Virus record (IMG/VR): IMGVR_UViG_3300042868_007959
Coordinates: 1-64,000 of that record
Direction: 5' to 3' (one strand)
Length of the DNA stretch: 64,000 nucleotides
The notes under the pieces are model-generated. The model did not search any database. It was not told the origin of the DNA and saw only the letters and a program-made list of their open reading frames with translations. The position numbers and the translations under genes are program-made. Positions 1 through 63,843 of this stretch are shown one piece after another. Numbering within the stretch: position 1 is the stretch's first letter; every line of letters starts with the position of its first letter.

Positions 1-537
1 CCCTAATACTTTATTTTGCCCATCGGCAGCATGAAAATAATCTGAAATAAACGGATTGTATTTTATTTCTTCCGCCATACCTTTTAATGTAATTGGATCA
101 TCTGGTAACTCCTGCACTATACCACCAACACCAACTACTTGCTCTCTAGATGACATTTCACCTTCATCTCTAGTAGTTCTCATAATTTTATGATACCCCA
201 AACTAATATCAAAATTAATATCCCCACCCAAAAGAATGTCATTGGTATAACCAATAATTCCTGCAGTTTGGTTTTTCCTTCCTGTTTTGGTTCTACCATA
301 AACACCAAAGGCACCATTTTTATTATGTTTAATATTATGTCTGTTAGTGTGGAACCATATTTCTTTACCTACTAGTTCAGGTGATCCACCTTCTAAATAA
401 CCGTGTTGTGCCTTTGACGCAATAACTGGATCTGACATTCCTGAGTGCCAAGGTGGTGTTTCATTTAGTAATCTATCTCTCATCTCCATTAATAGATTTA
501 CCTTCCCTATGTTAATTCTTTTATCTTTAGTTCTCAT
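1..537 (-). CDS. Hypothetical protein, truncated by the window edge; leader ends RLLNE
   Basis: Manual translation from ATG at 537 (MRTKDKRINIGKVNLLMEMRDRLLNETPPW...) is open to base 1; TATTTATA motif at 542-550 upstream; absent from the ORF track. Confidence 0.8.
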   Translation of the reverse strand, partial: MRTKDKRINIGKVNLLMEMRDRLLNETPPWHSGMSDPVIASKAQHGYLEGGSPELVGKEIWFHTNRHNIKHNKNGAFGVYGRTKTGRKNQTAGIIGYTNDILLGGDINFDISLGYHKIMRTTRDEGEMSSREQVVGVGGIVQELPDDPITLKGMAEEIKYNPFISDYFHAADGQNKVLG

Positions 538-562
538 ATAATATAAATATCACTTATTTTAT

Positions 563-1492
563 TCAGTAAGACAATTTATCAAGTAAAGTTTCGTTAAACT
601 GATTCCAGTCTATGTCTCCATTACCACCATATCTGAAATGTCTATCTTCATTTATTCTTATTTTTTCATCTGGTAATATTGGGTTATCTCCTCCCCCATA
701 ATAATTCTCTTGTTCTGCGATCTTCCATAAAATTTCCTCGGGTAATGCGTAACCTGATTCTATTTCATCCATTAAAACTTCCCCAAAATACGAATTATCT
801 ACTAATTCACCTAACTCTATTTCACCTTCGTATTGTAATTCATCATAGTTTTTACCTTGGCTATCTACTTTATTTGTTAGTTTACCGTTAAATCTACTCA
901 AATAATCATTTATCGCATCTAAGATATCTGAATGTAATGAGTTGATATCTGCACTGTGCTGAGCATCTCCTGCAGCACAACCAATATCACTACCATACTC
1001 TGATTCTATAAACTCCTTAAAATCTTCTTCGTTTTCTTCACCATCTAAATTCTCTAAATATTTTTCTTTTAATATTTTCATATTATTTTGATCAATTTTA
1101 TCTATCAACCAATCATCAACATCAAAACATTCATAGTCATACCCATAATCGTAATCCCCTTCTAAAAAATTTTTCACAATTGTCTGTATACCATACTCAC
1201 CGTCATTAAAAAATTCTGAAATCTCATTTGCGGTATATATAACAGGTATATAGTAAGGTGTCCTATTCTTATATTCAGTTAAATATTTATAAATGACATT
1301 AAATTCTTTCTCCGTTGATCCAAGATCTAAATCTTTTAGGGTGTTTTTCATAAATTTTTCTGGATCAGAATCAAATATCTTAAATAATTTATTATAAACA
1401 TTTTCAGGAAATAATTCCCCAAATTTATCAATGTCCTCATCCGTAGAGTCATCACCAAACTCTAATAATATTTTTCTAATTGTACCCTTCAT
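563..1492 (-). CDS. Acidic hypothetical protein with leader MKGTIRKILLE
   Basis: ORF track; leader motif; D/E-rich body resembling 49884, 52665 and 57678. Confidence 0.8.
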   Translation of the reverse strand: MKGTIRKILLEFGDDSTDEDIDKFGELFPENVYNKLFKIFDSDPEKFMKNTLKDLDLGSTEKEFNVIYKYLTEYKNRTPYYIPVIYTANEISEFFNDGEYGIQTIVKNFLEGDYDYGYDYECFDVDDWLIDKIDQNNMKILKEKYLENLDGEENEEDFKEFIESEYGSDIGCAAGDAQHSADINSLHSDILDAINDYLSRFNGKLTNKVDSQGKNYDELQYEGEIELGELVDNSYFGEVLMDEIESGYALPEEILWKIAEQENYYGGGDNPILPDEKIRINEDRHFRYGGNGDIDWNQFNETLLDKLSY

Positions 1493-2057
1493 TATATTCT
1501 ATTTTTTCTATTAATCCATCTTGCATATATAGATAATCTTCATCAGTTAAATGATCCTCAAAACTTAATTTTGTATCATCATGTGCGTCATAACTATATA
1601 ATCCATACCATTTTATGAATTCCATAAAATCCCCAACTTTCCTTATATCTAATTTTCTTTGTATTTCTCCACTATGTTTAGTCATATCAATAATAAAAGG
1701 TTGTTCAGTATATGAAAAAAAATCTTCGTATACTATTTCTGGTATATAATCAATAAAATTATCTTTTTTCAGATTAAATGAGACTAAATCATAAACTTTC
1801 TCCGCATCAGTAACGGATAACCCAAAAGAATGTTGTATATGTTCTACAATTCTTTCTGCAAATATATTTTTTTTAGATAATTGAATATATAAACCACTTC
1901 TACTATCTGGAATTATTGGTTTACCGTCTAAATCAATAATAGTTGTTCTTACTTTTCCGTTCTCCAAAAAAAAATCATCCTTAATCATATTATAAATTCT
2001 CTTTATAATACCTTCTTGAGCAAATTCATTTAATATCTTCTTTATTTTGAAATTCAT
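1476..2057 (-). CDS. Hypothetical protein with leader MNFKIKKILNE
   Basis: ORF track; TATTTATA at 2072-2080. Confidence 0.8.
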   Translation of the reverse strand: MNFKIKKILNEFAQEGIIKRIYNMIKDDFFLENGKVRTTIIDLDGKPIIPDSRSGLYIQLSKKNIFAERIVEHIQHSFGLSVTDAEKVYDLVSFNLKKDNFIDYIPEIVYEDFFSYTEQPFIIDMTKHSGEIQRKLDIRKVGDFMEFIKWYGLYSYDAHDDTKLSFEDHLTDEDYLYMQDGLIEKIEYNEGYN

Positions 2058-2116
2058 TCTTATTATTTTTATATAAATATACTTAAATTATAATAAAATA
2101 TTTCTATATTTGTAGA

Positions 2117-2386
2117 ATGGAAAGAAAAAAAGTGAAAACTGAAACCATCAAAAACGATGACTTCAAAAAAAGAGAGGTTGTGGAAGAGAAAAAAACCATC
2201 ATTAAAAGTGTTTCTAATGACAGTAAAGTAAAATGGGAGAAGGTTAAAGGTGTTAGTGGGAAAATAATTAGATATAAAGTGGGAGATGTTACCAGAAAAG
2301 AAGAGTTATCTAAAAAAAAATACCGTCAACTTTATGTGGGGGTTGACGGTAATGATATTTATTTTTATTATGAAATTATAGAATAA
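2117..2386 (+). CDS. Hypothetical basic protein
   Basis: ORF track; TATATTTG promoter at 2105-2112. Confidence 0.75.
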   Translation: MERKKVKTETIKNDDFKKREVVEEKKTIIKSVSNDSKVKWEKVKGVSGKIIRYKVGDVTRKEELSKKKYRQLYVGVDGNDIYFYYEIIE

Positions 2387-2388
2387 TG

Positions 2389-3284: not shown

Positions 3285-3479
3285 ATGGAAAATAAAATAG
3301 TTAAATGTTGTAAAGAATGTCCTTGGGATATTAGGAATAAAAATAATGACTCAATAGTAGAACATTCTAAAAAATGGAAGAAGAAACATAATTGTCATAT
3401 GTTGATAAAAGGTAGGGAATACAAACTTTGGGATGATTTCCCAAAGTTCCAGTGTATAGGGAACAAATCTATTTTTTAG
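3285..3479 (+). CDS. Small Cys-rich hypothetical protein
   Basis: CCKEC..HNC..C; start at ATG 3285 right after the previous stop. Confidence 0.6.
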   Translation: MENKIVKCCKECPWDIRNKNNDSIVEHSKKWKKKHNCHMLIKGREYKLWDDFPKFQCIGNKSIF

Positions 3480-4170
3480 TATCTACTTGATCCAATTCTT
3501 TAATTTTTTCTATTAGTTTTGCATACGTATTTTTTTCAGTTATCCCATTAGGATTTAATCCATTCTCTTTTTGGAATTTTCGTATTGCATCCATAGTAAA
3601 TTTACCGTATTTAGAATCTACCCCATCTTTTTTTGGACCAAATTTACCGATAAAATAATCCATCTTAATTAACATAGTTTGTATTTCACCTACTAGGTTG
3701 TTATAACAACCTTTTCTAATGATACTACTACCTAATACGTCAGTTTCATCTGCGGCACAATCGATTGTAGATTGTGTTTGTTTTTTTATGGTTTTACCAC
3801 CACCCTCTAATCCGTAACAAACATTTTTTAAAAACAGACACACTTGTTCTTTATCTTTAGTCAGTTTTGTTTGAAATTCTCTAAGTTCTTCTATAATATC
3901 CTCAATAAATTCGTCGAGTACCACACTCTCCTCAACCTTCGATGAAGAAGAACAAAAATCTCCCTCTTTCACTACCTCTCTTTGGGTATCACCAAAAACA
4001 TATATAACTTCTGAAGCAGATGTTTCTGCAACACACTCATTTTTATAAACTAACGTGTCACCATTTTGGGTACTTTTCGCACAAACAGGATTCCATTCCC
4101 CACCACATTTATAGTAGTCTTCTTTAAGGATTAACTTATTAAACTGATTTTCAGTTATTTTAATTTTCAT
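3469..4170 (-). CDS. Leader + Kazal-like domain + peptidoglycan-binding domain (PG_binding_1)
   Basis: C-x7-C (CGGEWNPVC), YKNEC and GDFC; C-terminal EIQTML..DSKYGKFTMDAIRKFQKENGLNPNGI. Confidence 0.7.
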   Translation of the reverse strand: MKIKITENQFNKLILKEDYYKCGGEWNPVCAKSTQNGDTLVYKNECVAETSASEVIYVFGDTQREVVKEGDFCSSSSKVEESVVLDEFIEDIIEELREFQTKLTKDKEQVCLFLKNVCYGLEGGGKTIKKQTQSTIDCAADETDVLGSSIIRKGCYNNLVGEIQTMLIKMDYFIGKFGPKKDGVDSKYGKFTMDAIRKFQKENGLNPNGITEKNTYAKLIEKIKELDQVDTKK

Positions 4171-4171: not shown

Positions 4172-4411
4172 TTAATATTTACCGTTTATATATATAAATA
4201 AGACTTCAGGTATTCTCACACACTGACTCATATTACCATTCGAATCATAACAACCAATAACCTCCAAACCCCTTACAATATTTTTAATGTCTCTAGGTGC
4301 CTTCATAGTAACATTTTCGACATATTGTTTATTGTATAATTTATTTGAATCATAAAATGATTCATTTATAATTTTTTTTAGTTGGGATTCTGATATAATA
4401 ATTTTTTTCAT
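4172..4411 (-). CDS. Small protein with leader MKKIIISESQLKKIINE
   Basis: Start moved to ATG 4411, just after the upstream stop. Confidence 0.8.
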   Translation of the reverse strand: MKKIIISESQLKKIINESFYDSNKLYNKQYVENVTMKAPRDIKNIVRGLEVIGCYDSNGNMSQCVRIPEVLFIYINGKY

Positions 4412-4412: not shown

Positions 4413-5195
4413 TTAGTATGTTGCTTTATATCCATCACAATTTTTGATACACCAATCACCTAAAGCTTTAATTCTATTTTGTTCTTCAGTAGGTATACCT
4501 GTAGAAGGCATTTTATTAACATATCCAGTTGTAAATGTTTTACTACAAAGACTACAAGATAAATCTTTTCCACTTTCTTTTTTATTACCTCTTAAACAAA
4601 ACTCAAATCCTTTATAATCAGGATCTGTAACACTAAATATATATTTTTTAACACAGTCTTTTAAATTTTCACAATCAACTGTATCTATAATTTTTATGGG
4701 ATCGATAATATAATCATCTATATCATCTTGCCAATCTTTGTCATCTTGCCAATCTTTGTTATCTTGACAATTACAATCGGTACAAAATTTTGGTTTAGGT
4801 AATGATTTAGAGAATGACAATTTTTTACACATCATTTGCCAAGTATTAAACCCGACTTTACCGTCAGCAGTTAACCCAAATTTGTTTTGAAACTCTTCTA
4901 CTGCCCCTTTAGTTTGGTTTTTAAATACTCCATCACATTTCGTCCAGTCAGAATAACACCAATCACCACTCATACCACCACCACTGTACTTAGTATTAAA
5001 TTGGTTTACGTATAATAAATGCTGAATCATTTTAACAACGTCACCGTTTGATCCGTACATTGCCAACTTTCTTTTACATATTATTTCACATAAATCATCA
5101 CCTATTTGTATGATACCAGTGTAAGCCTCATTTAGAACACTTTTAACTATCTTACTTAATTGACTTTCAGTTAATTTAATTACTCTTTTTTTCAT
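4413..5195 (-). CDS. Leader + peptidoglycan-binding domain + Cys-rich C-terminus
   Basis: GSNGDVVKMIQHLL...DGVF..QTKGAVEEFQNKFGLTADGKVGFNTW. Confidence 0.75.
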   Translation of the reverse strand: MKKRVIKLTESQLSKIVKSVLNEAYTGIIQIGDDLCEIICKRKLAMYGSNGDVVKMIQHLLYVNQFNTKYSGGGMSGDWCYSDWTKCDGVFKNQTKGAVEEFQNKFGLTADGKVGFNTWQMMCKKLSFSKSLPKPKFCTDCNCQDNKDWQDDKDWQDDIDDYIIDPIKIIDTVDCENLKDCVKKYIFSVTDPDYKGFEFCLRGNKKESGKDLSCSLCSKTFTTGYVNKMPSTGIPTEEQNRIKALGDWCIKNCDGYKATY

Positions 5196-7216: not shown

Positions 7217-7822
7217 TTAATTATTATATTTTAGTGTGAAAAAATCTCTACCATTTAAATATATTTCATGGTGATCCAATAAAGATCCATCACTTATCAG
7301 TCGTTCATAATCTTTTGTGGGTACGATAGACATTTTACTATTGTAAATTAAAATATTTTCTTTAAATCCATCTTCTATAAAATATTCAAATTCTGATATT
7401 TTTTCGAATTCACTTTCATATGTTTCTTGATCGTCACCAGTGATAATTGCGAAATTAAAGTTTTTATCGCTTAAAGGTAATGTTTCCTTTATAACATCCT
7501 TTCTTTTATACATTTTTTCCCAAACATTAAAGGCATCACCCCTAATATCTCCATCTCTAGAAATCATCAACCCATTAGGGTGGCAAAACATTAAAGCCAC
7601 TTCTAATACTGTAGGACCAAATCCTTTTTCTGCCGCAATCATTGGAAAATAATAGGTACCATCTTTATTTCTAGATAATCCTACAAATCCTAAAATTTCA
7701 CCGTTAACAAAGTCATACAATGATATATTCATATCATCATATATGGAAATTATAATATTTCTAGGTAGAGATGACATTTTTTTGTATTCTTCTTTTAATA
7801 TTCTCCGTATTATTTCTTTCAT
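7217..7822 (-). CDS. Leader + putative GNAT-fold protein
   Basis: IAAEKGFGPTVLEVAL (acetyl-CoA-loop-like), DAFNVWEK; leader MKEIIRRILKE. Confidence 0.45.
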   Translation of the reverse strand: MKEIIRRILKEEYKKMSSLPRNIIISIYDDMNISLYDFVNGEILGFVGLSRNKDGTYYFPMIAAEKGFGPTVLEVALMFCHPNGLMISRDGDIRGDAFNVWEKMYKRKDVIKETLPLSDKNFNFAIITGDDQETYESEFEKISEFEYFIEDGFKENILIYNSKMSIVPTKDYERLISDGSLLDHHEIYLNGRDFFTLKYNN

Positions 7823-7856: not shown

Positions 7857-9017
7857 CTAAAAAGGCATTTTTTCTGATATCTCTAACGATAATTCTTTAA
7901 TATATTTTTTAAAAATAATTTCTGCCAATTCCTCATCCACACCAAAATTATTTACGACATAATCAATATCCATTGAACCCATCATCCATCCACTCTTCCA
8001 TCTATGTACATCCCAAGGTTTATAAGTGTATTCTTCCCAAGGATACATAGGAAACTTTACTGAGGCAATTTTTTCTGACATAGTACCCCCATAATTTTTA
8101 TCCAATATTTCGTATTCAGTATCTTCTAACATTGTTTTTACAATGTAATCGTAGAACTTTTGTTTTCTATCTACTGATTCTGTAACGTAACTTTTACCTT
8201 CACCATCTTCAAATCCTATTAATTGACCAGTTTTAGAATCGTATTCTTTTTCCACCCAATCCCCATAGGCATCTTCATAATACACCAACAATTCTTTACC
8301 AGTGTGGGGAATTTCTAACATTACTTGTACATATTGTGGTAGTGAAACCCCCCCAACTATAAAAGAGTCAGACATATGGATTGTTATACGCCACCCATAA
8401 ATCATTCTAAAAATATCACCCCATTCTTCTATAGGGATATTGAAATTATGGAAATCAACCATATAAGGTTTTTTCAATAAAGGAATTATTTTTTTATAGT
8501 ATGAATTTTTATCTTCTACTGATTCTGTAATATTTTTTTTCGATCTAATATCATATATTTCACCATCTGATTTTTCTCGATAAATCAATTCGTTATTGGA
8601 ATTAAATTCACTTACTATCCAAAAACCATTATTTTCGTAGTATATTTGATTTTCATTTTGATCGTACCTATATATAGATAGGTTTCCCATATCTAACTCC
8701 TCATGTTCAATTAAATTACCATAGTTATCATATACCTTCCTAAGATAATCTCCATTCGGGTATTCTTTATATGTAAGGTGATCATTATCCCAACGGTAAA
8801 GTTCCCAATACCCATCAGGTGTTTCATAATATAGTGGATTATTATCTTTTTTATCTAATACCTCATCCATACCAGTTATGTAAACAGGTTTATTAAAAAC
8901 AATAGATAATATTTGATCATGACTTTTTTTATCGTGAAACCCCATTTCCGATAAATCTTTAAAATACGGTTTTTGAATTATCTTTGCGACTTTATTATAT
9001 ATATTTTCTTTTTCCAT
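7857..9017 (-). CDS. Three-module polyprotein (ITE|SV and VTE|SV junctions) with YYE..GxW..EYD beta-repeats
   Basis: KNITESVEDK and SYVTESVDRK junctions; the third module starts YDYIVKTMLEDT. Confidence 0.75.
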   Translation of the reverse strand: MEKENIYNKVAKIIQKPYFKDLSEMGFHDKKSHDQILSIVFNKPVYITGMDEVLDKKDNNPLYYETPDGYWELYRWDNDHLTYKEYPNGDYLRKVYDNYGNLIEHEELDMGNLSIYRYDQNENQIYYENNGFWIVSEFNSNNELIYREKSDGEIYDIRSKKNITESVEDKNSYYKKIIPLLKKPYMVDFHNFNIPIEEWGDIFRMIYGWRITIHMSDSFIVGGVSLPQYVQVMLEIPHTGKELLVYYEDAYGDWVEKEYDSKTGQLIGFEDGEGKSYVTESVDRKQKFYDYIVKTMLEDTEYEILDKNYGGTMSEKIASVKFPMYPWEEYTYKPWDVHRWKSGWMMGSMDIDYVVNNFGVDEELAEIIFKKYIKELSLEISEKMPF

Positions 9018-9053
9018 TATAATAATAAATATAGAGGAGAAAAGAAAATAAAA

Positions 9054-9605: not shown

Positions 9606-9609
9606 AAGA

Positions 9610-9641
9610 CAAATATAGACAAATAAAATAATAAAATCAAA
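9610..9641 (-). promoter_or_regulatory. Bacteroidota primary-sigma promoter
   Basis: TTTG-N20-TATATTTG. Confidence 0.85.
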
Positions 9642-9646
9642 TTATA

Positions 9647-10468
9647 TTAGGATTTCTTAATGTCCTTACTCTGATCCTCTACAAATGATTCTTTAATACC
9701 TGTATCTTTTAAAAACTTTTTGTGAGACTCCTTATAAGATTTTTGTGTTTCATCATCCGAATTTTTGGTGAACTGCCAATTCCAATAAAGTGAATCGTTT
9801 ATCTTAAACCCATAATACTCATGACTTTCTTTTTGTGTATCAACAACGTTATTACCATTCCAGTTCTGTCCCGTACAAATATACCCAGACTCAATATTTT
9901 TAATTAAATTAGATTCACCTAACGTTGTGTGTCTATTTTGAATCCATGTAAGTCTTTCCATTAAGTTTTGGTAGTACATATTTGCCTGTCCCCATCTTAC
10001 AGATGAAAAGAATACCACCGCATCTGATTCAAATAACTCCTTACTAATTTTCCATAGTTCATCGGAAGGTTCATTTATATTCACCCAACACCTATGAAAA
10101 CCAGAAGGATTTTTAGACTTATCCTTTAACATTGCCTTTAGTATACCACAACTGTTCCCATCTTTTCTTGATACGTTACCCTCACAAGGTAATATTTTCA
10201 TTTCTGTTACATCCATAAATTCTACAATATCACCTAACTCTTCTTTTATGTATAAGGCAATTAATCTAGATTTAGGTATATCGATATTATCATCATCGAA
10301 CTGATATCTATTAGAACAAGAAAGTAATAAAACTTTCTTTTTTTTCTTTAACTCATCTATTGTTTTTTTAAGGTTTCTAAAACTTGCGGTATTTGGTGAA
10401 TCATCTTTTGATTCAGACACAATACGCATCATATCTTTTATCCTATTTAATTCTTCTTGTAAATTCAT
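9647..10468 (-). CDS. Leader + flavodoxin-like FMN reductase / iron-sulfur flavoprotein family protein
   Basis: VLLLSCSNR, ILPCEG..C..C, ESDAVVFFSSVRWG..QNLMERL; start moved to MNLQEE. Confidence 0.8.
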   Translation of the reverse strand: MNLQEELNRIKDMMRIVSESKDDSPNTASFRNLKKTIDELKKKKKVLLLSCSNRYQFDDDNIDIPKSRLIALYIKEELGDIVEFMDVTEMKILPCEGNVSRKDGNSCGILKAMLKDKSKNPSGFHRCWVNINEPSDELWKISKELFESDAVVFFSSVRWGQANMYYQNLMERLTWIQNRHTTLGESNLIKNIESGYICTGQNWNGNNVVDTQKESHEYYGFKINDSLYWNWQFTKNSDDETQKSYKESHKKFLKDTGIKESFVEDQSKDIKKS

Positions 10469-10475: not shown

Positions 10476-11084
10476 TTAATATCTTGTATTATTAGTGACA
10501 AAATCACCTAAGAATAATCTATAGTTATCCCATAATATTTTAAGATTTTTACCCTCAATATTAAACATATCGGAACAATAACTAACGAATTTTGGTGGTG
10601 GGGTTTCTAGGTTTAATAAATATAGGATATCTATATTCTCATTACTACTATATCTTAACGAAATACTATTGACAAAAAAAGGTACCTTTAATACTGAAGA
10701 GTTAACTTGATAGGTATCATCTTCAAGAATATTTAATATCTTATCTAAATACGTAACCATTCTATCATCCGATTCGTTAATAGTTTTTTTATTATAAACA
10801 ATATCTATTAAAAAATCTTTATATTTTTCCCATACATAATCGATTTGATTATCATCTTCTAACACATAATTATCATATAGATAATCTACTAATCCCAGTG
10901 GTATAGAATTATATCGTAAAATCCCTTTCATATTTGCTTCAGTAAATGCTCTATGGTTACTCCAAGGTAACTTAAAAAATAATAAGAATGTCGTATCGGC
11001 AAGAGATTGAGATTCTTGAAATTTCGTGTTGGTAATTAAATCATTAATGATATAATTTAAATATTTTTCTATTCTACTGTTCAT
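10476..11084 (-). CDS. Two-module polyprotein (INE|S)
   Basis: YLNYIINDLITNT...INESDDRMVTYLDKILNILEDDT. Confidence 0.75.
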   Translation of the reverse strand: MNSRIEKYLNYIINDLITNTKFQESQSLADTTFLLFFKLPWSNHRAFTEANMKGILRYNSIPLGLVDYLYDNYVLEDDNQIDYVWEKYKDFLIDIVYNKKTINESDDRMVTYLDKILNILEDDTYQVNSSVLKVPFFVNSISLRYSSNENIDILYLLNLETPPPKFVSYCSDMFNIEGKNLKILWDNYRLFLGDFVTNNTRY

Positions 11085-11754
11085 TTATAAAAATTTCTCC
11101 CATCTTATTCATTAATAAAACCGTTGATCCTAAACCAAAACTTGTTACTATCGAAGGATTTTTATTTGTGTACTCCCTAAATATTTCCAACATCTCTTTA
11201 AGGATATAGTCCATATATGTGTCACAAAATTTCTCAAATGACTCTACAGTACCATCATTTTCTAAGTATAGTCCATATGAATTTTTAAAATCATGTATTT
11301 TTACCACATACATATCACTTCTATCCTCGAATTGTTCATATGTCATACTTTCTAAAAGACTGTCAACAGTTTGATATATAATTTTAATTAATTTTTGTTT
11401 TAGATCCTCACTAAAACCGTCAAATTTTAAAAAATCTGATGGGTTACCCATCATCCATTGGTGATGTGAGGTAATATTTTCAGTAATAGTTTCTATATTA
11501 CCACCATATCTTCTATCTTTTAATTTTGAGACATATCTATCCCATACATATCTAACCTCTGATCGGGCAACCCCATAATTATCTTCAATATATTCCACAA
11601 ATAAAATGTAAGGTGTTCCTTGATTCTTTAAAAAATATTCCCAACCCACAACACCAAATGGTGAGATAAGTTTTAAAGGGAGATCACTAATTTTACTATC
11701 GTCTACTAAAAAATCAACAATTCTATTCAAATATTGTATGTTTCTAACACTCAT
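11074..11754 (-). CDS. Module-family protein (YLNRIVDFLVDD) plus a second segment after ITE|N
   Basis: Start moved to ATG 11754; TATTTAT at 11767-11774. Confidence 0.75.
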   Translation of the reverse strand: MSVRNIQYLNRIVDFLVDDSKISDLPLKLISPFGVVGWEYFLKNQGTPYILFVEYIEDNYGVARSEVRYVWDRYVSKLKDRRYGGNIETITENITSHHQWMMGNPSDFLKFDGFSEDLKQKLIKIIYQTVDSLLESMTYEQFEDRSDMYVVKIHDFKNSYGLYLENDGTVESFEKFCDTYMDYILKEMLEIFREYTNKNPSIVTSFGLGSTVLLMNKMGEIFINEQ

Positions 11755-14561: not shown

Positions 14562-15014
14562 TTACCACCAACTGAACCCACCGAATTTAGTGGCATTAAA
14601 ACCAAATTTTTTATTCAATATAGATACTAATTCAGATTCCCATAATTTAGTCTTATTAAAATAATTGTTTAAAGTCTCCATCATCTCTTCACTAATAACA
14701 ATCATATCAAAATTAGTGTCCATAGCATATGTAATATCAGGTCTTTCGTAACAAGGTTCTGGTAGTTCATCGGAAAGTTCTTTAGGGTAATTACCATCCC
14801 CCCTATATCCTTTCCTCACAAGTTTAAAAATATAATCATCATGATTATCAGATTCAGGTAATACAAAACCAATTGCGTAAGGATCACAACAAATCCCCAT
14901 ACCACAGTTGTATTCCGCCCAATCCATCCATGAATCAGTTAAATTAGGGTATTCAATATCTAGTACTCTCTCTATAGTACTAATCATTTTACTTTCTGTT
15001 ATAATAATTTTCAT
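14562..15014 (-). CDS. Hypothetical protein with leader MKIIITE
   Basis: ORF track. Confidence 0.8.
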   Translation of the reverse strand: MKIIITESKMISTIERVLDIEYPNLTDSWMDWAEYNCGMGICCDPYAIGFVLPESDNHDDYIFKLVRKGYRGDGNYPKELSDELPEPCYERPDITYAMDTNFDMIVISEEMMETLNNYFNKTKLWESELVSILNKKFGFNATKFGGFSWW

Positions 15015-15337
15015 TTGTTAAAAATTTCAAGGTATAAATCTATTATGTATTGTCCATACCAATTCCAAATTTTATTTGATGTATCAAAATCCAATCCGTA
15101 ATGTCTATCCATAATCGTATAAAAACATTCAGGTACCAACTCAAAAAACGGATTATACCTTGAATGGTTTAAATGTATAGATATGTTACAATCAAATAAA
15201 TACCAATGGTATCCTTTTAGTTCTGTATTGGTTATTATGTCATTTATGACATAATCATTAAATCTTTTATTATCACTTATATTTACAGATTCATTAATAA
15301 GTCTTTTGAATTGATTTTCTGTTATAATAATCTTCAT
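15011..15337 (-). CDS. Leader + single module (MKIIITENQFKRLINE|SV)
   Basis: Start moved to ATG 15337; module motifs present. Confidence 0.8.
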   Translation of the reverse strand: MKIIITENQFKRLINESVNISDNKRFNDYVINDIITNTELKGYHWYLFDCNISIHLNHSRYNPFFELVPECFYTIMDRHYGLDFDTSNKIWNWYGQYIIDLYLEIFNK

Positions 15338-23636: not shown

Positions 23637-23760
23637 ATCCATATTATAAATACCTTAATATTTGGAAACGTAAATTTTTCTGGAAAATTTTTAACCCTAT
23701 ATACCGTTCACCAGAAATGGGTGTTCATTGTCACTGAACAAACCTATGTATTGAACAATA

Positions 23761-52664: not shown

Positions 52665-53795
52665 TTATAATATATGGTGGAAATTATCTACTACAAAATA
52701 ACTTTGGTTGTCTATATCGACTGTCATTAAGTGCTCAGTATTTAACGCTTTGCTAATCATCTCTTTTATCATACCCATCTCATCAAATTGTATGAGTCCG
52801 TCATCTATTGCTTCACTTATTGTCATTTCCGATTCATTAACATAATCAATTGGGTTTTCTTTATACTCATCCTCTAATTCATCAAATCTATAATGAAGAT
52901 ACATATTTTTTATGTCCTCATCAGAAATTTCACTATCTCTAAGATCATCAATATCAGATTCTAAATCAGAAATGTATTGTGATATGTTATGATAATCTAG
53001 ATTTAGTTCATTTAATTTAGTTTCTATTTTATTTAAATACTTTTCGAATCTATTATAATCTTCATCATCATCACCTTCTATCTCTTGTTTAATAACCGCC
53101 CTTTCGGATTCTAAAGATTCTATTTTTTTAAGTAGTGAATTCATTTTTTTTTCTTCTAATTTTAATTCACCTTCTAAATCTAATATCATTTCTCTATTGT
53201 TTTCGATTTCTTCTAATGTTTTACCATCATCTATATATTCTAATAAATTATCAATCGATTTATACCCTATCTCTTCCTGAATCTTCTCATTGATGTTATA
53301 GTTTAAAGATTCTTCATCTAAAACAATATATTTTTCTATCAGTGGTCTCCTATACCCACTAAATTCGTTATCATACATTTTTTCTCTAATACTACGAACT
53401 AGGTCATCATATGTACCAACTTCATATATCCCACCATTCTCAATAAATTTATAAATTTTTAAATCGTAAACATCACCTCTAAAAATAAAAAATTCTGGTA
53501 CAACTCCCCATAATTTTGATATCGCTCTAACTTGTCTACTATATCTATCTTCAGAAGTTAATTCCCATTCTATCAATTCATCATATGTTTCATCATCCTC
53601 TATGATATTATTTTTATATAACTTAATAACTCTACCTATTAAATCTCTATCATCTATATGTAAATCATTAACCAAAACTTTATATATACTTTCAGGATTT
53701 CTAGACTCAAGATTACTATGTAAATAATTAAGTAATTTTAATTCAACCTTATTAACGTGATCAACATTTTCCGATATTAATTTTATTAATTTCAT
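52665..53795 (-). CDS. Leader MKLIKLISE + acidic coiled-coil protein
   Basis: Similar layout to 57678..58766. Confidence 0.8.
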   Translation of the reverse strand: MKLIKLISENVDHVNKVELKLLNYLHSNLESRNPESIYKVLVNDLHIDDRDLIGRVIKLYKNNIIEDDETYDELIEWELTSEDRYSRQVRAISKLWGVVPEFFIFRGDVYDLKIYKFIENGGIYEVGTYDDLVRSIREKMYDNEFSGYRRPLIEKYIVLDEESLNYNINEKIQEEIGYKSIDNLLEYIDDGKTLEEIENNREMILDLEGELKLEEKKMNSLLKKIESLESERAVIKQEIEGDDDEDYNRFEKYLNKIETKLNELNLDYHNISQYISDLESDIDDLRDSEISDEDIKNMYLHYRFDELEDEYKENPIDYVNESEMTISEAIDDGLIQFDEMGMIKEMISKALNTEHLMTVDIDNQSYFVVDNFHHIL

Positions 53796-54664
53796 TCTAT
53801 ATATTTTTCTATATCATCTAAAGTTATTTCATTACCATTAATCACATCAATAATTTCATTTACTTTATTATTAAAATCCTCTTCGTAATCTACTTGAATA
53901 CTTTCCACATACTCCTTATCAAGAGTCATATAAATGTTTTTACTATTCCTTTCAAAAAAATCATCAACGTCACTATTTTCCCATTCTAATACATCCGTAG
54001 CAATAACCATATAACTAATCTCTTCCATCTGGTAATAATGATCTCTAGTGTGTTGTTCGCCAGCACCGTCGCAATAATCACAAGGGATTTTACCGCTACC
54101 ATCACAATCGTAACAAGTTTCATTTCCTGCACCACCACATTCACTACATTCTATTTCTTGTTCTTCACCTTCTCCATCTGTTTCTATTTTCATACCCTCT
54201 CCGTCACAATAACCACATTCTAAATTACCCTCTCCGTCACAATTTCTACATTCTACTTCACCACTACCGTGACACTCATCACATTGGTATGTTTCTTCAC
54301 GATAATCCTCTTCTATATTTGGACTAGTACAAGAAATGAATGTTAATCGGAACCCTTCCCCTGTTGAAATTCTATCAGTTAAAAAGTTGTTAACATCTAT
54401 ATTGATAAGATATAAAAATACAAGGTTTTTGGTGTCTTTATTTTCTAAAGATAACTCATGTTTAAAAAAATTTACTAATCTTTTATATTGGTTACTGTAA
54501 ATGATTGATGTGTCTGAAAAACAATCGTCACAATATACTTTTTGCCAAAAAAAATCTTTTAAATCTGGTTCCGAATTAGATAACATGTTTAAACATTTTC
54601 GATAAAAAATATTATCTAATTTAGATTGGTATGAACTTTCTTTAATTATATTAATAAACTTCAT
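53792..54664 (-). CDS. Leader MKFINIIKE + DnaJ-type zinc-finger repeats
   Basis: Six CxxCxGxG repeats; no J-domain HPD motif seen. Confidence 0.75.
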   Translation of the reverse strand: MKFINIIKESSYQSKLDNIFYRKCLNMLSNSEPDLKDFFWQKVYCDDCFSDTSIIYSNQYKRLVNFFKHELSLENKDTKNLVFLYLINIDVNNFLTDRISTGEGFRLTFISCTSPNIEEDYREETYQCDECHGSGEVECRNCDGEGNLECGYCDGEGMKIETDGEGEEQEIECSECGGAGNETCYDCDGSGKIPCDYCDGAGEQHTRDHYYQMEEISYMVIATDVLEWENSDVDDFFERNSKNIYMTLDKEYVESIQVDYEEDFNNKVNEIIDVINGNEITLDDIEKYIE

Positions 54665-54926: not shown

Positions 54927-55313
54927 TTATCTCTTTTTACGACCTTGACAATGTGCCCTTTGTGAAAACCCTTTTGGGTTATTACAGTCAATAGACTTTT
55001 TATATTTTTGTGACCACTTTTCTTCTAACATATCTGAAGACTTTTTTTCACCTTCTAATTTATTCATAAAGAAATCAAATACTTGATCAATATTAACCTT
55101 TGCTTCAGTTACATGATCATCTGCCCAATCATGACCATTGTTTAAAATGTCATTTACTTTATTCGGATCAAATTCTTTAATCATAATATCTAATTGTCTT
55201 CTCATTTGAGTTAGGTTACTGAAAAACATATAGTTTTCACCTTTAGATTCTTCATTTAAAGTTTCTCTTACTATTCTATAAAGATCCTTTTCTGTCAATG
55301 TTACTTTTTTCAT
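54927..55313 (-). CDS. Leader protein with a basic Cys-containing C-terminal peptide after LEE
   Basis: MKKVTLTEKDLYRIVRETLNE; MLEE|KWSQKYKKSIDCNNPKGFSQRAHCQGRKKR. Confidence 0.8.
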   Translation of the reverse strand: MKKVTLTEKDLYRIVRETLNEESKGENYMFFSNLTQMRRQLDIMIKEFDPNKVNDILNNGHDWADDHVTEAKVNIDQVFDFFMNKLEGEKKSSDMLEEKWSQKYKKSIDCNNPKGFSQRAHCQGRKKR

Positions 55314-55323: not shown

Positions 55324-56088
55324 TTATAAACCTTGTTTTATTGATGCCTCTTGAGAACTAGAAGCGGTTTGTGGTACGCAGTCACCTAAACTATCATCTG
55401 ACATTACTGTCATTAACCCACCAATAAAGTCAGTCATTATGGAGTTAGCCAAACCACCTGTTTTTTCACCGAATTTTTTTCGTATACCATCAGATATTAT
55501 TGTTAACATCTGAGCACTAATAAACCCACCACCTAAAGCTTTTAAAATTGTTTTTGCAATATTTTTTAAGAACCCTTTTTGTTGGTTGTACCTTCTATAC
55601 ATCATCTCAATCGCATCATCTATAGTAAAATTATTTGATTCTTCTTTAGTCAATAAATTGTTAGTAATTAACTCATTTTTCATATCAGTATAAACTCTTT
55701 GGAATAAGTCATATATTTGATTTTTTACTGGTTCCATTCTTTCTGCTGCTAAAGTACCAGGTTTTCTACCTTTCCTACAATCTTCCGCATTTAAATCTTC
55801 TAATCTACCAAATAATGAACCCAAAGGTTCTATTATAGTTTGTAGTTGTGTTCTATAATTACCTAAATTAGCTGATTTCATATCCTCAGCAAATTTTGCC
55901 AAAGATTTTTCTAAATTAGGTAAATTGTCTACATCTGCCGTTTGCGTCGCCTGTTTCTCACTACCGACTGTTTTATTTTTACTTACCCTAGATAGTATAA
56001 GTTTTGCCTTATCTAAAAAATTTTCAGATATTAAAGATTTATTTTTTATTAATCTTCTAAATTGTCTCTCACTAATAATAATTTTCAT
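55324..56088 (-). CDS. Hypothetical protein with leader MKIIISERQF..LISE
   Basis: ORF track. Confidence 0.8.
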   Translation of the reverse strand: MKIIISERQFRRLIKNKSLISENFLDKAKLILSRVSKNKTVGSEKQATQTADVDNLPNLEKSLAKFAEDMKSANLGNYRTQLQTIIEPLGSLFGRLEDLNAEDCRKGRKPGTLAAERMEPVKNQIYDLFQRVYTDMKNELITNNLLTKEESNNFTIDDAIEMMYRRYNQQKGFLKNIAKTILKALGGGFISAQMLTIISDGIRKKFGEKTGGLANSIMTDFIGGLMTVMSDDSLGDCVPQTASSSQEASIKQGL

Positions 56089-57677: not shown

Positions 57678-58766
57678 TTAATCTATTCTATATATATAAT
57701 AATATTCCCCATTGTATCTTTCATAACTTTCATTACCATCATAAGATGCTAATGTGACACCTCTATCTTCATTTTCAGCCAAATAAGACTCTAATCCTGA
57801 CTCATCAAAATCGTAGTAGTATCGTATTGCATCTTCTTTAGACAACCCAAATTCGTCAGTAAAATAAGATAAACCACCATCTATTACCCTTTCTCTTATC
57901 TCTTCATCATATTTTTCAATCAACTCCTCTCTAGCAGTATCAACTAAACTATCTAGTTCAGATTTCTTATCTTCTAATTGGTCCCCTAAAGTTTCCATTT
58001 CAGAACTTAATTCTCTCATTTTAATAGTTACATCGTCAATAGCTGAATCGTTTTCACCCTCTTCATTATCTTCTTCTAGATCACTCATCTCATCGTCTAA
58101 ATCAGATATTTCTGATTCAATCTCCTCAATTCTATATTCGATATTACTTATTTGTTCCTCAAATTCATCTTTATCGTATCCTGCTTCAGAAATTATATCA
58201 TCATCATCCATATCATCTACCCTATAATTTGCTTCTTCAGATGCGAAATGACTAAGACTATAATCATTAAGTTCGATATAGTCTTCAATTAGTGATGTAT
58301 CGATATTATCATACCCACCTTGATTGTCTACCCATCCATCAAAATACTTCTCCATTGCCGATGCAACGTCACTATCTGTCCCAACTGCAAATTTTTCATC
58401 ATCTTCTATATTACGGAAAACTTTTAACCCATAGTGTTCTTCATCGGTGTCTTCTATCATAATAGGAGGTAAATTTGCCCACTCCGACAAAGCTGCATGT
58501 TCATCATAGTAGTTAGAAATGTCATCAATATCATCTAAATCTGAATCTGTAACCCCTTCATAATTACCATCTTCATTAAAATTGTTTACAAATAAATGTA
58601 ACAATTCTAATTTTAGTGTCATATCCTCAATATTCAAAGTTTTTGTTAAAAATCCCCATATATCAGAAACATCATCAGTCTCACCTAAAGAAAGTGTCAT
58701 TGCCCTAAGAACTCTTTTATGTATTGGTAAAATGGTATTTTCAGTTATAAGTTTACTTAATTTCAT
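57678..58766 (-). CDS. Leader MKLSKLITE + acidic coiled-coil protein
   Basis: Similar to 52665..53795; TATTTAT at 58793-58800. Confidence 0.8.
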   Translation of the reverse strand: MKLSKLITENTILPIHKRVLRAMTLSLGETDDVSDIWGFLTKTLNIEDMTLKLELLHLFVNNFNEDGNYEGVTDSDLDDIDDISNYYDEHAALSEWANLPPIMIEDTDEEHYGLKVFRNIEDDEKFAVGTDSDVASAMEKYFDGWVDNQGGYDNIDTSLIEDYIELNDYSLSHFASEEANYRVDDMDDDDIISEAGYDKDEFEEQISNIEYRIEEIESEISDLDDEMSDLEEDNEEGENDSAIDDVTIKMRELSSEMETLGDQLEDKKSELDSLVDTAREELIEKYDEEIRERVIDGGLSYFTDEFGLSKEDAIRYYYDFDESGLESYLAENEDRGVTLASYDGNESYERYNGEYYYIYRID

Positions 58767-62850: not shown

Positions 62851-62864
62851 ATCTTATTTTTAGA

Positions 62865-62896
62865 CAAATATATGGAATAGATTCCGAATAACCAAA
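62865..62896 (-). promoter_or_regulatory. Bacteroidota primary-sigma promoter
   Basis: TTTG-N20-TATATTTG. Confidence 0.85.
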
Positions 62897-62974
62897 TTTT
62901 TATTGATTTATTATTTACAAAATAATATTAATACTGATATTTATAATAATAACATTTTAAAAAAACTTAATCAA

Positions 62975-63076
62975 ATGGGTTGCGGTTGTAAAAAGAAAAA
63001 ACCAGTGGTTACTACTCAAAGTAGTAATCAAAGTACTACTCAAAGTAGTAATCAGTCAAATAATAGTGGTAACTAA
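62975..63076 (+). CDS. 33-aa peptide MGCGCKKKKPVV(TTQSSNQS)2NNSGN
   Basis: Manual translation; own TATTTATA at 62937-62944; below the ORF-track cutoff. Confidence 0.65.
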   Translation: MGCGCKKKKPVVTTQSSNQSTTQSSNQSNNSGN

Positions 63077-63493
63077 TTAAGTTAATTGATTTGCGGGTCC
63101 TCTAGCAGGCTCAACCGACCACGGTGAGCTATCTATTGGATTCGCAACTCCCCTATTTACATCTTTAAGAGGCCAAACAGTAGAAGATCCACCAGCAGGT
63201 GCACCTTCATCCTCCTCGTCTAATATTTCTTCATCAGTATAATCATCAATACCGATACCATATTCAGTTACGACAAGTCCGTACCCACCTTCTTTATCAT
63301 AGTACCCTAAATAGATATCATTATCATCATACACTACTGTTTCGTATGCATTACTATCAAACCTAAGTCTTTTAGGTTCACCATTAACCCATTTAAGTAT
63401 TTTCTTATACCAACTTTTAGGATCTTTGATTGTTTCACCAAATTCCCTAATTAGTATTTTTTTATATTGACTTTCTGTAATTATTATTTTCAT
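63077..63493 (-). CDS. Hypothetical protein with leader MKIIITESQYKKILIRE
   Basis: ORF track; start adjusted. Confidence 0.8.
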   Translation of the reverse strand: MKIIITESQYKKILIREFGETIKDPKSWYKKILKWVNGEPKRLRFDSNAYETVVYDDNDIYLGYYDKEGGYGLVVTEYGIGIDDYTDEEILDEEDEGAPAGGSSTVWPLKDVNRGVANPIDSSPWSVEPARGPANQLT

Positions 63494-63843
63494 CACCAAT
63501 TTCTTTCTTTATTGTTAATAACATTTAGCAATTTAACTTTTATGTTTTTATTTCCAGTCATATCCATTATTTCCCCTTTTATATCATAGAAAAAACTACC
63601 TACATCTGCACTATCAAAAATAGAATCAATATAAATTATTAAACCAATTTCATTATCAAAAGAAGTTGCAACTTCGACATTTTCTACTATATCCAATATT
63701 TCACAATCAACATCCTCATCAGCATAATCCCAATCCTCATCTTCTGTAGCGTGTTCACACTTATCCCTTAAATTATTTAATGAGATGTCCACTATTTTTT
63801 GATAAACAGTTTTAAGTTGGTTTTCAGTTATTAAAACTTTCAT
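63493..63843 (-). CDS. Hypothetical protein with leader MKVLITENQL
   Basis: ORF track. Confidence 0.8.
   Translation of the reverse strand: MKVLITENQLKTVYQKIVDISLNNLRDKCEHATEDEDWDYADEDVDCEILDIVENVEVATSFDNEIGLIIYIDSIFDSADVGSFFYDIKGEIMDMTGNKNIKVKLLNVINNKERNW

What the first reader, a model, noticed from the sequence alone, without database searches (positions are those of the whole stretch)
1..63843. About 29 unrelated proteins share a short basic N-terminal leader ending in (I/L/V)-x-E: a candidate capsid-targeting and maturation-cleavage system
Seen: three leader types recur on unrelated bodies. Type A is MK(I/K)(I/V)x(I/L)(T/S)ExQ..(I/L)xE (genes starting 4170, 4411, 5195, 15014, 15337, 15982, 24116, 55313, 56088, 63493, 63843). 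Type B is short MKxx(I/L)..(I/L)xE (1492, 2057, 7822, 21014, 25786, 35101, 39250, 39786, 53795, 54664, 58766). Type C is MxxLxEE(I/L)xxIKxMMxIxxE (10468, 38261). The small genes behind host-type promoters (29.2-33.3 kb, 35.2-36.7 kb) lack them. Established: T4 internal proteins carry an N-terminal capsid-targeting sequence (IPIII MKTYQEFIAE) removed by prohead protease gp21, which cuts after (I/L)-x-E; phiKZ gp175 also cuts after Glu. Inference: this phage loads dozens of cargo proteins into its head with a portable tag and may eject them into the host.
Basis: partly seen in the sequence, partly recalled or inferred. Interest (0 to 1): 0.92.

Follow-up and report, generated by a model that had tools for sequence, protein, structure and literature searches.

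The report
Portable head-targeting leaders on phage proteins
About twenty unrelated proteins of this 282-kb freshwater jumbo phage start with interchangeable short leader peptides that end in the cutting motif of its T4-type head protease, so they are probably loaded into the capsid as cargo, which has not been shown by experiment.

Summary
Nineteen of the 24 listed genes carry leaders that profile models recognise, and five fit only a loose motif. N-terminal similarity is about 12 times chance.

The leaders are phage-specific. The same classes recur on hundreds of unrelated proteins in related low-GC phage contigs. They are almost absent from 596 Gb of cellular genomes, and they are conserved at protein level, not DNA level.

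Leader classes swap on orthologous bodies, so they are portable modules.

The window's own contig encodes a T4 gp21-type protease (Peptidase_S77), a scaffold-like protein and a Gp23 capsid protein, about 250 kb from the window start. The capsid protein has LLNE|S at the position aligned to the known T4 gp23 cut. All 138 clade capsid proteins have this hydrophobic-hydrophobic-N/T-E|S/A motif there. The leaders end in the same motif, and it also joins about 25 tandem modules in nine genes.

One leader protein (34166-35101) is an Ntn hydrolase. Its invariant catalytic Cys directly follows an invariant Glu, so that leader must come off exactly there.

Best reading: a greatly expanded T4-style capsid-targeting and propeptide system. 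Cleavage is well supported but indirectly. Capsid loading and ejection remain inference.

The parts
563..1492 (-). Gene with type B leader (11 aa, ends ILLE|F)
   Evidence: Type B profile 14.5 bits. No Pfam match.
3469..4170 (-). Gene with type A leader (17 aa, ends ILKE|D). Body has a peptidoglycan-binding domain.
   Evidence: Type A profile 28.3 bits. PG_binding_1 E 5.8e-12.
4172..4411 (-). Gene with type A leader (17 aa, ends IINE|S)
   Evidence: Profiles 23.6 and 28.5 bits. Also hit by the profile built only from other contigs.
4413..5195 (-). Gene with long type A leader (23 aa, ends VLNE|A). Body has a peptidoglycan-binding domain.
   Evidence: Long-form type A profile 37.8 bits. PG_binding_1 E 7.8e-12.
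7217..7822 (-). Gene with type B leader (11 aa, ends ILKE|E)
   Evidence: Type B profile 20.7 bits.
9647..10468 (-). Gene with type C leader (19 aa, ends IVSE|S)
   Evidence: Type C profile 37.3 bits. Orthologues in L065 and L019 (68-72% identical) align from residue 1, so they keep the leader.
14562..15014 (-). Gene with a truncated type A leader (MKIIITE|S only)
   Evidence: Type A profile 16.1 bits.
15011..15337 (-). Type A leader (16 aa, ends LINE|S) fused directly to one repeat module
   Evidence: Type A profile 33.2 bits. The body aligns with the module family.
15659..15982 (-). Gene with type A leader (16 aa, ends LINE|N)
   Evidence: Type A profile 30.7 bits.
21014..21397 (+). Gene with type B leader (11 aa, ends ILKE|E)
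   Evidence: Type B profile 14.5 bits. A homologue in L106 has a degenerate leader.
23814..24116 (-). Gene with long type A leader (22 aa, ends TVKE|S)
   Evidence: Long-form type A profile 34.0 bits. In L143 a 98-aa gene with a near-identical long type A leader and a similar start of the body lies between the protease and scaffold genes; its orthology was judged by eye, not tested by BLAST.
34166..35101 (-). Ntn-hydrolase zymogen. A 22-aa type B/C leader ends VLNE, and the invariant Cys23 follows directly.
   Evidence: 746 homologues. The leader class varies among them, but E22 and C23 are invariant. Pfam AAT matches 23 of 32 members. AlphaFold2 pTM 0.82, with the first strand starting at residue 24. 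The top Foldseek matches (E<=1e-3) in the PDB are Ntn hydrolases, best 2x1c at E 1.5e-8.
36828..38261 (-). Gene with type C leader (20 aa, ends IINE|D)
   Evidence: Type C profile 25.4 bits. The body is 63% identical to an L118 protein that has a different 176-aa N-terminus.
38957..39250 (-). Gene with type B leader (11 aa, ends ILKE|E)
   Evidence: Type B profile 24.0 bits.
39256..39786 (-). Gene with type B leader (11 aa, ends ILKE|E)
   Evidence: Type B profile 24.2 bits.
54927..55313 (-). Gene with long type A leader (21 aa, ends TLNE|E). Body belongs to the YMFFSNL family.
   Evidence: Long-form type A profile 27.1 bits. Orthologues (55% identical) lie just downstream of the protease gene in L045, and between protease and capsid genes in L032. 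The same family carries type B leaders in L143 and L183.
55324..56088 (-). Gene with type A leader. A second motif, LISE|N, ends at residue 22.
   Evidence: Type A profile 27.1 bits.
63077..63493 (-). Gene with type A leader (17 aa, ends LIRE|F)
   Evidence: Type A profile 30.5 bits.
63493..63843 (-). Gene with type A leader (MKVLITE|N)
   Evidence: Type A profile 24.3 bits.
1476..2057 (-). Weak candidate: loose motif only (ILNE|F at residue 11)
   Evidence: Fits the loose motif. No profile hit of 5 bits or more.
24761..25786 (-). Weak leader (IVKE|N at residue 11) followed by repeat modules joined by MNE|S
52665..53795 (-). Weak candidate (LISE|N at residue 9). Coiled-coil protein, paralogue of 57678-58766.
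   Evidence: Loose motif only. Paralogy shown.
53792..54664 (-). Weak candidate (IIKE|S at residue 9). Body has DnaJ-type zinc-finger repeats.
57678..58766 (-). Weak candidate (LITE|N at residue 9). Coiled-coil protein.
21384..23642 (-). 752-aa array of about seven repeat modules, with six internal INE|SVD junctions
   Evidence: Six sites observed against 0.12 expected. Module alignment A3. The modelled junction tail is flexible.
26047..27120 (-). 357-aa array of four modules joined by INE|S or MNE|S
12105..13445 (-). 446-aa module array that starts with the minimal leader MKINE|S
7857..9017 (-). 386-aa module array with ITE|S and VTE|S junctions
10476..11754 (-). Two adjacent two-module genes (10476-11084 and 11074-11754). 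Their first modules start exactly where internal modules start after the junction.
15334..15651 (-). Stand-alone single module without a leader

Best explanation
The leaders are T4-style capsid-targeting propeptides.

Proposed mechanism:
1. Each leader is a short amphipathic N-terminal helix that docks the protein onto the scaffold core while the prohead assembles.
2. The phage's gp21-family protease then cuts after the Glu of a motif made of two hydrophobic residues, any residue, then Glu. The capsid protein is matured at the same kind of site. This frees the cargo inside the head.
3. The same site between tandem modules would cut the module arrays into pieces of about 100 residues.
4. The site in front of Cys23 would activate an Ntn hydrolase only inside the head.

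Shown: the leaders exist, are phage-specific, are portable and act at protein level. The protease, scaffold-like protein and capsid protein are encoded on the same contig. The site motif is shared. One leader must be removed precisely after Glu.

Inferred: binding to the core, cleavage by this particular protease, presence in virions and ejection into the host.
For: - Non-chance N-terminal similarity, specific to N-termini.
- Synonymous codons at leader positions follow background usage, and upstream DNA is not conserved, so selection acts on the peptide.
Nearly all are at ORF starts and continue with the unrequired Q-aromatic-x-x-L consensus. A longer version found only 3 small MAG contigs in 596 Gb of cellular genomes.
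- 32 of 71 body families carry different leader classes, or none.
- The window's contig encodes proteins identical to the Peptidase_S77 protease, scaffold-like protein and Gp23 capsid protein of the 281,944-bp relative.
- The capsid-protein site LLNE|S, and the equivalent site in all 138 unique clade capsid proteins, aligns with T4 gp23 LTE65|A and gp24 LRE10|S.
- T4 gp21 cuts after L/I-x-E, and T4 internal proteins carry 10-19-residue targeting propeptides (PMC9026906). T4 IPII and IPIII begin MKTYQEFIAE|A. That is the same spacing of hydrophobic residues as type B.
- Leader genes lie inside or next to head modules: after or between protease and capsid genes in L032, L045, L143 and L025, and directly before TerL in this phage.
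- The tetrapeptide [ILMV][NT]E[SA] occurs 33 times in the window proteome against 4.4 +/- 2.3 in shuffles, and most copies are at leaders and module junctions.
- In the Ntn hydrolase, Glu-Cys is invariant behind variable leaders. The modelled leader is a detached helix with a low-confidence linker.
- Proteins with recognisable cytoplasmic roles have no leader: kinase, response regulator, sigma factor, thymidine kinase, IMPDH/GMP reductase-family enzyme, bS21, ferritin and the canonical endolysin.
Against: - There is no proteomic or experimental evidence, and no cultured relative was found.
- The scale is unprecedented: 17% of window genes, and 29 of about 215 genes read in this genome. T4 has about eight head-core proteins of this kind.
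- Leader genes are not enriched near head modules. They make up 4.7% of genes within 10 kb of the capsid gene, against 17-23% in leader-rich islands.
- Only about a third to a half of type A leaders from other contigs have Glu at position 15 or 16.
- The residue after the cut in cargo does not track that of the capsid protein across lineages.
- Ntn hydrolases normally process themselves.
- T-E-S-Q and similar are also ordinary helix-capping boxes, so the motif could be structural.
- The T4 cut positions are carried over by alignment, not measured in this clade.
Confidence: 0.58

Rival explanations
1. The leaders are removable propeptides (pro-segments) but not capsid-targeting signals. They are cut in the cytoplasm, or by the protein itself, and serve to keep enzymes or binding modules inactive or folded until they are processed.
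For: The Ntn hydrolase family needs its leader removed, and Ntn hydrolases usually process themselves. Leader genes are mostly outside head modules. The module junctions sit in flexible tails.
Against: Self-processing does not explain why unrelated bodies without a nucleophile share the same leaders. It also does not explain why the residue before the cut is always Glu with hydrophobic residues two or three places earlier, as at the capsid-protein site. The T4 gp21 family is known to act inside proheads (PMC9026906).
Confidence: 0.16
2. The leaders are never cut. They are a shared docking helix, a strand followed by an amphipathic helix, that binds a common partner such as a chaperone, a membrane site or a phage hub. 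The resemblance to the protease site reflects helix-capping preferences in an AT-rich proteome.
For: T/S-E-x-Q/D are typical helix caps. Many leaders from other contigs lack a second Glu. No covariation with the capsid-protein site was seen.
Against: The invariant Glu-Cys junction of the Ntn hydrolase requires removal. The same motif sits at the aligned T4 cut in every clade capsid protein. The motif is enriched 7.5-fold over composition-matched shuffles. Small residues (Ala, Ser) are enriched just after the Glu.
Confidence: 0.15
3. The conserved 5' coding sequence acts at the RNA level, as a translation-start enhancer for ribosomes that do not use Shine-Dalgarno pairing, perhaps linked to the phage's own bS21 protein.
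For: The codons are A/U-rich. The phage encodes bS21. Hosts of this phage group are reported to lack Shine-Dalgarno use (PMC9723584).
Against: Synonymous codon choice at leader positions matches background. Three different peptide classes are exchanged on orthologues. The motif also occurs internally at module junctions. The leader is nearly absent from cellular genomes, including Flavobacteria. The capsid-protein, scaffold-like and protease genes lack type A, B or C leaders.
Confidence: 0.04
4. Chance or composition: MK-rich, Ile/Lys/Glu-rich N-termini of an AT-rich genome look alike.
For: 29% GC. About 10 of 99 genes fit the loose motif by chance.
Against: Shuffled and internal controls give a count 12 times lower for similar pairs, and 0-1 profile hits against hundreds.
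Confidence: 0.02

Closest known systems
Phage T4 capsid-targeting sequences of internal proteins IPI, IPII, IPIII and Alt, removed by prohead protease gp21
   Same: A short N-terminal peptide sits on unrelated, fast-evolving bodies. It ends with a hydrophobic residue, any residue, then Glu before the cut. The genome encodes a gp21-family (Peptidase_S77) protease, a T4-type portal and a Gp23 capsid protein. Type B spacing (hydrophobic, x, x, hydrophobic, hydrophobic, x, Glu) mirrors MKTYQEFIAE.
   Different: No detectable sequence homology to the T4 leader. There are at least three leader classes instead of one. Tens of genes per genome, and hundreds of families across the clade, carry them, against a handful in T4. 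Leaders run up to 23 residues, sometimes with two candidate sites. The same site also links tandem modules. Packaging has not been demonstrated.
Propeptides and ejection proteins of giant phages phiKZ, 201phi2-1 and SPN3US (proteases gp175 and gp245)
   Same: A jumbo phage with many head-internal proteins, processed after Glu by a diverged gp21 relative. The number of cargo proteins is large (more than 50 head proteins in SPN3US).
   Different: Those proteases prefer a small residue (S/A/G or A) three places before the cut. Their propeptides are long and dissimilar to one another. Here that position is hydrophobic and the leaders form recognisable sequence classes.
T4 scaffold core proteins gp22, gp67 and gp68, cut at several internal sites
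   Same: Multiple internal sites ending in Glu within one polypeptide. The clade's scaffold-like proteins carry a conserved INES site near the C-terminus.
   Different: The module arrays here are folded repeat domains of about 100 residues with a fold that matches nothing in the PDB or BFVD. They are not coiled-coil scaffold, and they are encoded far from the head module.
Ntn-hydrolase precursors (isopenicillin-N acyltransferase, penicillin V acylase, bile-salt hydrolase)
   Same: The fold matches, and the catalytic Cys must become the N-terminus after the propeptide is removed.
   Different: Known members process themselves or lose only Met, and have no conserved Glu before the Cys. This family has invariant Glu-Cys behind the phage's interchangeable leaders.

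Membership tests
T4-type capsid-targeting sequence / gp21-cleaved propeptide | Short N-terminal peptide shared by otherwise unrelated proteins of one phage | tested here: met
   47 similar pairs against about 4 expected. Bodies are unrelated by BLASTP. Profiles hit N-termini only.
T4-type capsid-targeting sequence / gp21-cleaved propeptide | Peptide ends in the protease motif: hydrophobic, any residue, Glu, then the cut | tested here: met
   All 19 core leaders contain two hydrophobic residues, any residue, then Glu within residues 3-23. Only a third to a half of type A leaders from other contigs have the second Glu.
T4-type capsid-targeting sequence / gp21-cleaved propeptide | Same genome encodes a gp21-family prohead protease and a T4-type head | tested here: met
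   Peptidase_S77, Portal_T4, Terminase_6N and Gp23 in L293. Proteins identical to the protease, scaffold-like and capsid proteins are encoded on the window's contig.
T4-type capsid-targeting sequence / gp21-cleaved propeptide | The motif is the one used at the capsid protein's maturation site | tested here: met
   LLNE|S in this phage, and the same motif in 138 of 138 clade capsid proteins, aligned to the T4 gp23 and gp24 cuts. The cut itself is inferred from T4.
T4-type capsid-targeting sequence / gp21-cleaved propeptide | Leader is necessary and sufficient to load a protein into the prohead | not testable with these tools
   Needs a packaging assay with leader fusions.
T4-type capsid-targeting sequence / gp21-cleaved propeptide | Leader is absent from the mature virion protein | not testable with these tools
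   Indirect support only: the Ntn hydrolase needs Cys23 as its N-terminus.
T4-type capsid-targeting sequence / gp21-cleaved propeptide | Sequence relationship to the T4 leader MKTYQEFIAE | tested here: inconclusive
   Same hydrophobic spacing as type B by inspection. The peptide is too short for a homology test.
phiKZ/SPN3US-type head propeptides | Small residue (S/A/G) three places before the cut | tested here: not met
   That position is Leu, Ile, Met or Val in the leaders, the junctions and the capsid protein.
Sec, Tat or lipoprotein signal peptides | Hydrophobic core of 10 or more residues, a lipobox, or a twin-arginine motif | tested here: not met
   By inspection (no signal-peptide predictor was run), the leaders are charged amphipathic helices. 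Lipoprotein-signal-like N-termini occur on other genes, 29214-29420 and 36468-36710.
Ntn hydrolase, peptidase C45 / AAT-like (gene 34166-35101) | Four-layer Ntn fold with the nucleophile at the start of the first strand | tested here: met
   Foldseek 2x1c E 1.5e-8, followed by bile-salt hydrolase, penicillin V acylase, proteasome beta and acid ceramidase. The first strand starts at residue 24. Pfam AAT matches 23 of 32 members.
Ntn hydrolase, peptidase C45 / AAT-like (gene 34166-35101) | Autocatalytic removal of the propeptide | not testable with these tools
   Cannot be told apart from cleavage by the phage protease.
Encapsulin cargo-loading peptides | Usually a C-terminal peptide that binds an HK97-fold shell, with no proteolysis | tested here: not met
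   The signal here is N-terminal and ends in a protease motif.

The most novel reading that the evidence does not exclude
The leaders are a sequence-readable address label for the phage's injected proteins. More than a tenth of the genes of a large, uncultured clade of Bacteroidetes jumbo phages would encode cargo that is loaded into the head. That cargo would be matured there by the T4-type protease and delivered with the DNA. It would include enzymes switched on only by that cut and polyproteins diced into modules of about 100 residues with a new fold.
Probability: 0.4. Interest if true: 0.85.

Novelty: new variant of a known kind. Interest (0 to 1): 0.72.

Why it matters
If this reading is correct, simple profiles could list the proteins a jumbo phage carries into the cell, straight from metagenomic sequence. 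At present this needs virion proteomics of cultured phages.

Such cargo is where T4 keeps anti-restriction and host-takeover proteins. The leader-bearing ORFans, the peptidoglycan-binding proteins, a second lysozyme, a DHH-like enzyme and the Ntn hydrolase therefore become candidate early-acting or counter-defence factors.

It would also supply a set of natural packaging tags for a non-model phage group. It would give a possible case of an enzyme activated by a capsid protease.

Tried and rejected
- DNA and protein searches of 50,697 deposited phage genomes found only unannotated huge-phage records or leaderless endolysins. No cultured relative carries the leader.
- Literal motif searches of the literature found nothing.
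- PHROGs, Pfam and the ESM Atlas gave no function for the genes next to bS21.
- I suspected that 56101-57669 (522 aa) was the capsid protein because it shares a 29-residue WSPEMAQD..FHNI stretch with clade capsid proteins. A profile of 80 capsid proteins matches only that stretch, so I dropped the idea.
Walking along the genome from 64 kb upward met only small genes and metabolic genes. The head module was reached by walking the other way on a circularly permuted 281,944-bp relative, and it was then confirmed on this contig.
- I looked for covariation between the residue after the cut in cargo and in the capsid protein. None was seen.
- The repeat module has no fold match in the PDB or BFVD.
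- Sequence searches of the PDB with the Ntn hydrolase and its family profile found nothing. Only the fold search did.

Full report
**What the window is.** The window is bases 1-64000 of IMG/VR contig 3300042868_007959, which is 253,879 bp long; window and contig coordinates coincide. It has 29% GC and about 109 genes, nearly all on the minus strand. The same sample holds a 28,016-bp contig. Together the two contigs tile a circularly permuted 281,944-bp relative that encodes identical proteins. Recognisable genes include:
- an endolysin (PG_binding_1 plus Glyco_hydro_19);
- a PAS histidine kinase and a response regulator;
- a sigma-70-family factor;
- thymidine kinase;
- an IMPDH/GMP-reductase-type enzyme;
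- an HNH endonuclease;
- ferritin and ribosomal protein bS21.

The bS21 gene and the gene content place the phage with the freshwater jumbo phages predicted to infect Bacteroidetes, described in PMC9723584.

- All-against-all comparison of the first 25 residues gave 47 pairs scoring 30 or more. Random internal segments gave 3.4 and shuffled N-termini gave 4.0.
- A profile built only from leaders of other contigs found nine matches above noise in a six-frame translation of the window. All are on the coding strand and at gene starts.
- Four profiles iterated on 3156 distinct N-termini from 278 related loci hit 264, 259, 61 and 46 N-termini. They hit 0-1 internal or shuffled 30-mers.
- In the window these profiles support 19 genes: all eleven type A starts, six type B starts and both type C starts.
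That motif is present in 30 of 99 genes against about 11 expected, so roughly 20 genes are in excess of chance.
- Bodies are unrelated apart from a few paralogues.
- The small genes at 29.2-33.3 kb and 35.2-36.7 kb have no leaders.

**The signal acts at protein level.**
- The DNA upstream of the start codons is not conserved among leader genes.
- Synonymous codons at the leader positions follow genome-wide usage.
Nearly all are ORF starts in contigs of 25-35% GC. They continue with Q, an aromatic residue, x, x, L, although that was not required.
- A longer version found only three small MAG contigs in 596 Gb of bacterial and archaeal genomes.

The leader is therefore a virus-specific peptide, not a host-like translation feature.

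**The leaders are portable.**
- Among 71 families defined by their bodies, 32 carry different leader classes or a degenerate or absent leader.
- The YMFFSNL family (window 54927-55313) has long type A leaders in some phages and type B leaders in others.
- A DHH-like 500-residue family has type A, type B or a minimal leader, always joined at hydrophobic-x-E-S-G.
- After the leader there is typically a short polar or acidic spacer before the conserved body.

**The head protease and the capsid site.**
- Searching the MKIIITE loci with T4 head proteins found T4-like TerL, portal, gp21 and gp23 genes next to leader genes in seven loci.
- For this phage, L293 shows the following order: a type B leader gene, a type A leader gene, TerL, Portal_T4, two small genes, Peptidase_S77, a 435-residue scaffold-like protein and a Gp23 capsid protein.
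- An exact 48-base string from the protease gene lies on the window's own contig. That locus encodes proteins identical to the protease, scaffold-like and capsid proteins.
- The capsid protein reads ..ENQASALLNE|ST... In a MAFFT alignment of clade capsid proteins with T4, the equivalent site lines up with T4 gp23 FLTE65|A and gp24 LLRE10|S. T4 gp21 is documented to cut after L/I-x-E (PMC9026906).
- All 138 distinct clade capsid proteins have x-[LM]-[IL]-[NT]-E-[SA] there.
- The clade proteases have a conserved motif of two hydrophobic residues, x, then Glu near residue 35. The two relatives' scaffolds examined have INES near the C-terminus.
- The window's leaders end LINE|S, IINE|S, VLNE|A, TLNE|E, ILKE|E, IVSE|S and IINE|D, which is the same kind of motif.

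**The same motif links modules inside proteins.**
- [ILMV][NT]E[SA] occurs 33 times in the window proteome, against 4.4 +/- 2.3 in shuffles.
- About 17 copies are junctions between repeat modules of 85-135 residues. The family spans nine genes and about 25 modules.
- First modules of leaderless genes begin exactly where internal modules begin after the junction.
- An AlphaFold2 model of one module (pTM 0.74) is a compact helix, hairpin and two-helix unit. Its ..PINE tail is of low confidence, so it is probably flexible and exposed.
- The fold matches nothing in the PDB or BFVD.

**An independent argument for removal.**
- Gene 34166-35101 has 746 homologues. Their leaders are of type A, B or C, but all those inspected join the body at two hydrophobic residues, x, E|C-[TV]-[IV]-A. 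E22 and C23 are invariant in a 32-sequence alignment.
- The model (pTM 0.82) shows a leader helix at residues 3-15, a low-confidence linker at 13-21, and the first strand starting at residue 24.
- The top Foldseek matches are Ntn hydrolases: isopenicillin-N acyltransferase at E 1.5e-8, bile-salt hydrolases, penicillin V acylase, proteasome beta subunits and acid ceramidase. Pfam AAT matches 23 of 32 members.
- Such enzymes work only when the nucleophile is the N-terminal residue, so this leader must be removed exactly after Glu22.
- Whether the phage protease or the enzyme itself does this cannot be decided here. The invariant Glu with hydrophobic residues before it is the protease's motif, and known self-processing relatives do not share it (the last point is from my own knowledge).

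**Comparison with T4.**
- T4 IPII and IPIII start MKTYQEFIAE|A. gp24 starts MAKINELLRE|S and Alt starts MELITELFDE|D.
- The review PMC9026906 states that the 10-19-residue propeptides of the internal proteins target them to the prohead core and are then removed by gp21. It also suggests that this may be a general way for T4-like phages to load diverse proteins.
- Type B leaders have the same hydrophobic spacing as the T4 leader.
- The system here therefore works like the T4 one, and it meets the features of that kind that could be tested.
- It differs in scale: 19 genes in 64 kb, and 29 of about 215 genes read in this genome. It also differs in having several leader classes, internal junction sites and no demonstrable sequence homology to the T4 leader.

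**What weakens the reading.**
- There is no virion proteome and no cultured relative.
- Leader genes are not concentrated near head modules: 4.7% of genes within 10 kb of capsid genes, against 17-23% in leader islands.
- Many type A leaders from other contigs lack the second Glu.
- I saw no covariation between cargo sites and capsid-protein sites.
- T-E-S-Q-type sequences are also ordinary helix caps.
- A head holding on the order of a hundred different cargo species would be without precedent.

**Verdict.**
- Capsid loading and ejection are plausible by analogy with T4 but unproven.
- I rate this a new, greatly expanded variant of a known kind of system. It has practical value because it would make the cargo readable from sequence alone.

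Noticed in passing
window 58841-59524 (+): Ribosomal protein bS21 (62 aa) and ferritin lie together on the opposite strand, among minus-strand genes. In the published bS21 phages this gene sits inside the head module. Here the head module is about 250 kb away on the contig.
   Followed up: partly
window 7857-27120 (nine genes): A repeat-module family of about 25 modules takes up roughly 14% of the window's coding capacity. Each module starts SVD.K..YLDKIV..L.DDT and has ..YGLT..E...VW..Y near its end. The confident model has no structural match in the PDB or BFVD. Function unknown.
   Followed up: partly
window 56101-57669 (-): A 522-aa protein shares only a 29-residue stretch (WSPEMAQD..FHNI) with the clade's capsid proteins. 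It has an internal LITE|S site at residue 339, and the part after that site is homologous to stand-alone ORFs in L010, L090 and L121.
   Followed up: partly
window 18121-20169 (-): A phage-encoded two-component pair, a membrane PAS histidine kinase and a response regulator, lies next to the lysis-like genes at 16006-18124.
   Followed up: no
window, 5-25 bases upstream of many start codons (for example 2057, 7822, 24116, 35101, 39786, 16830, 62850): A recurring TATATTT(A/G)T element resembles the Bacteroidetes -7 promoter box. It occurs before both leader genes and leaderless genes.
   Followed up: no
L290:7282-8136 (same genome, outside the window): A second lysozyme (Pfam Phage_lysozyme2, 284 aa) carries a type A leader ending LLNE|T, whereas the canonical endolysin at window 16006-16830 has none. 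It is a candidate virion-carried wall hydrolase.
   Followed up: partly
window 41078-43072 (-): A 664-aa protein has a signal-peptide-like N-terminus and CUB, GEVED and discoidin-like domains. Similar secreted-looking proteins follow the capsid gene in L143.
   Followed up: no
window 49884-51698 (+), and contig 64-83 kb (L123, L127): A set of RNA-repair and NAD-salvage genes: HAD_SAK_1 'Swiss army knife' RNA-repair domain, T4-type RNA ligase, CCA-adding enzyme, NAPRTase and a phosphoribosyltransferase. A gene-free gap of about 2.4 kb (L127 4993-7359) might hold tRNAs.
   Followed up: no
L016, L024, L027, L041, L088, L115, L117 (related contigs): Many small leader-bearing proteins in relatives have a zinc-ribbon-like CxxC..W.W body directly after the leader.
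   Followed up: no
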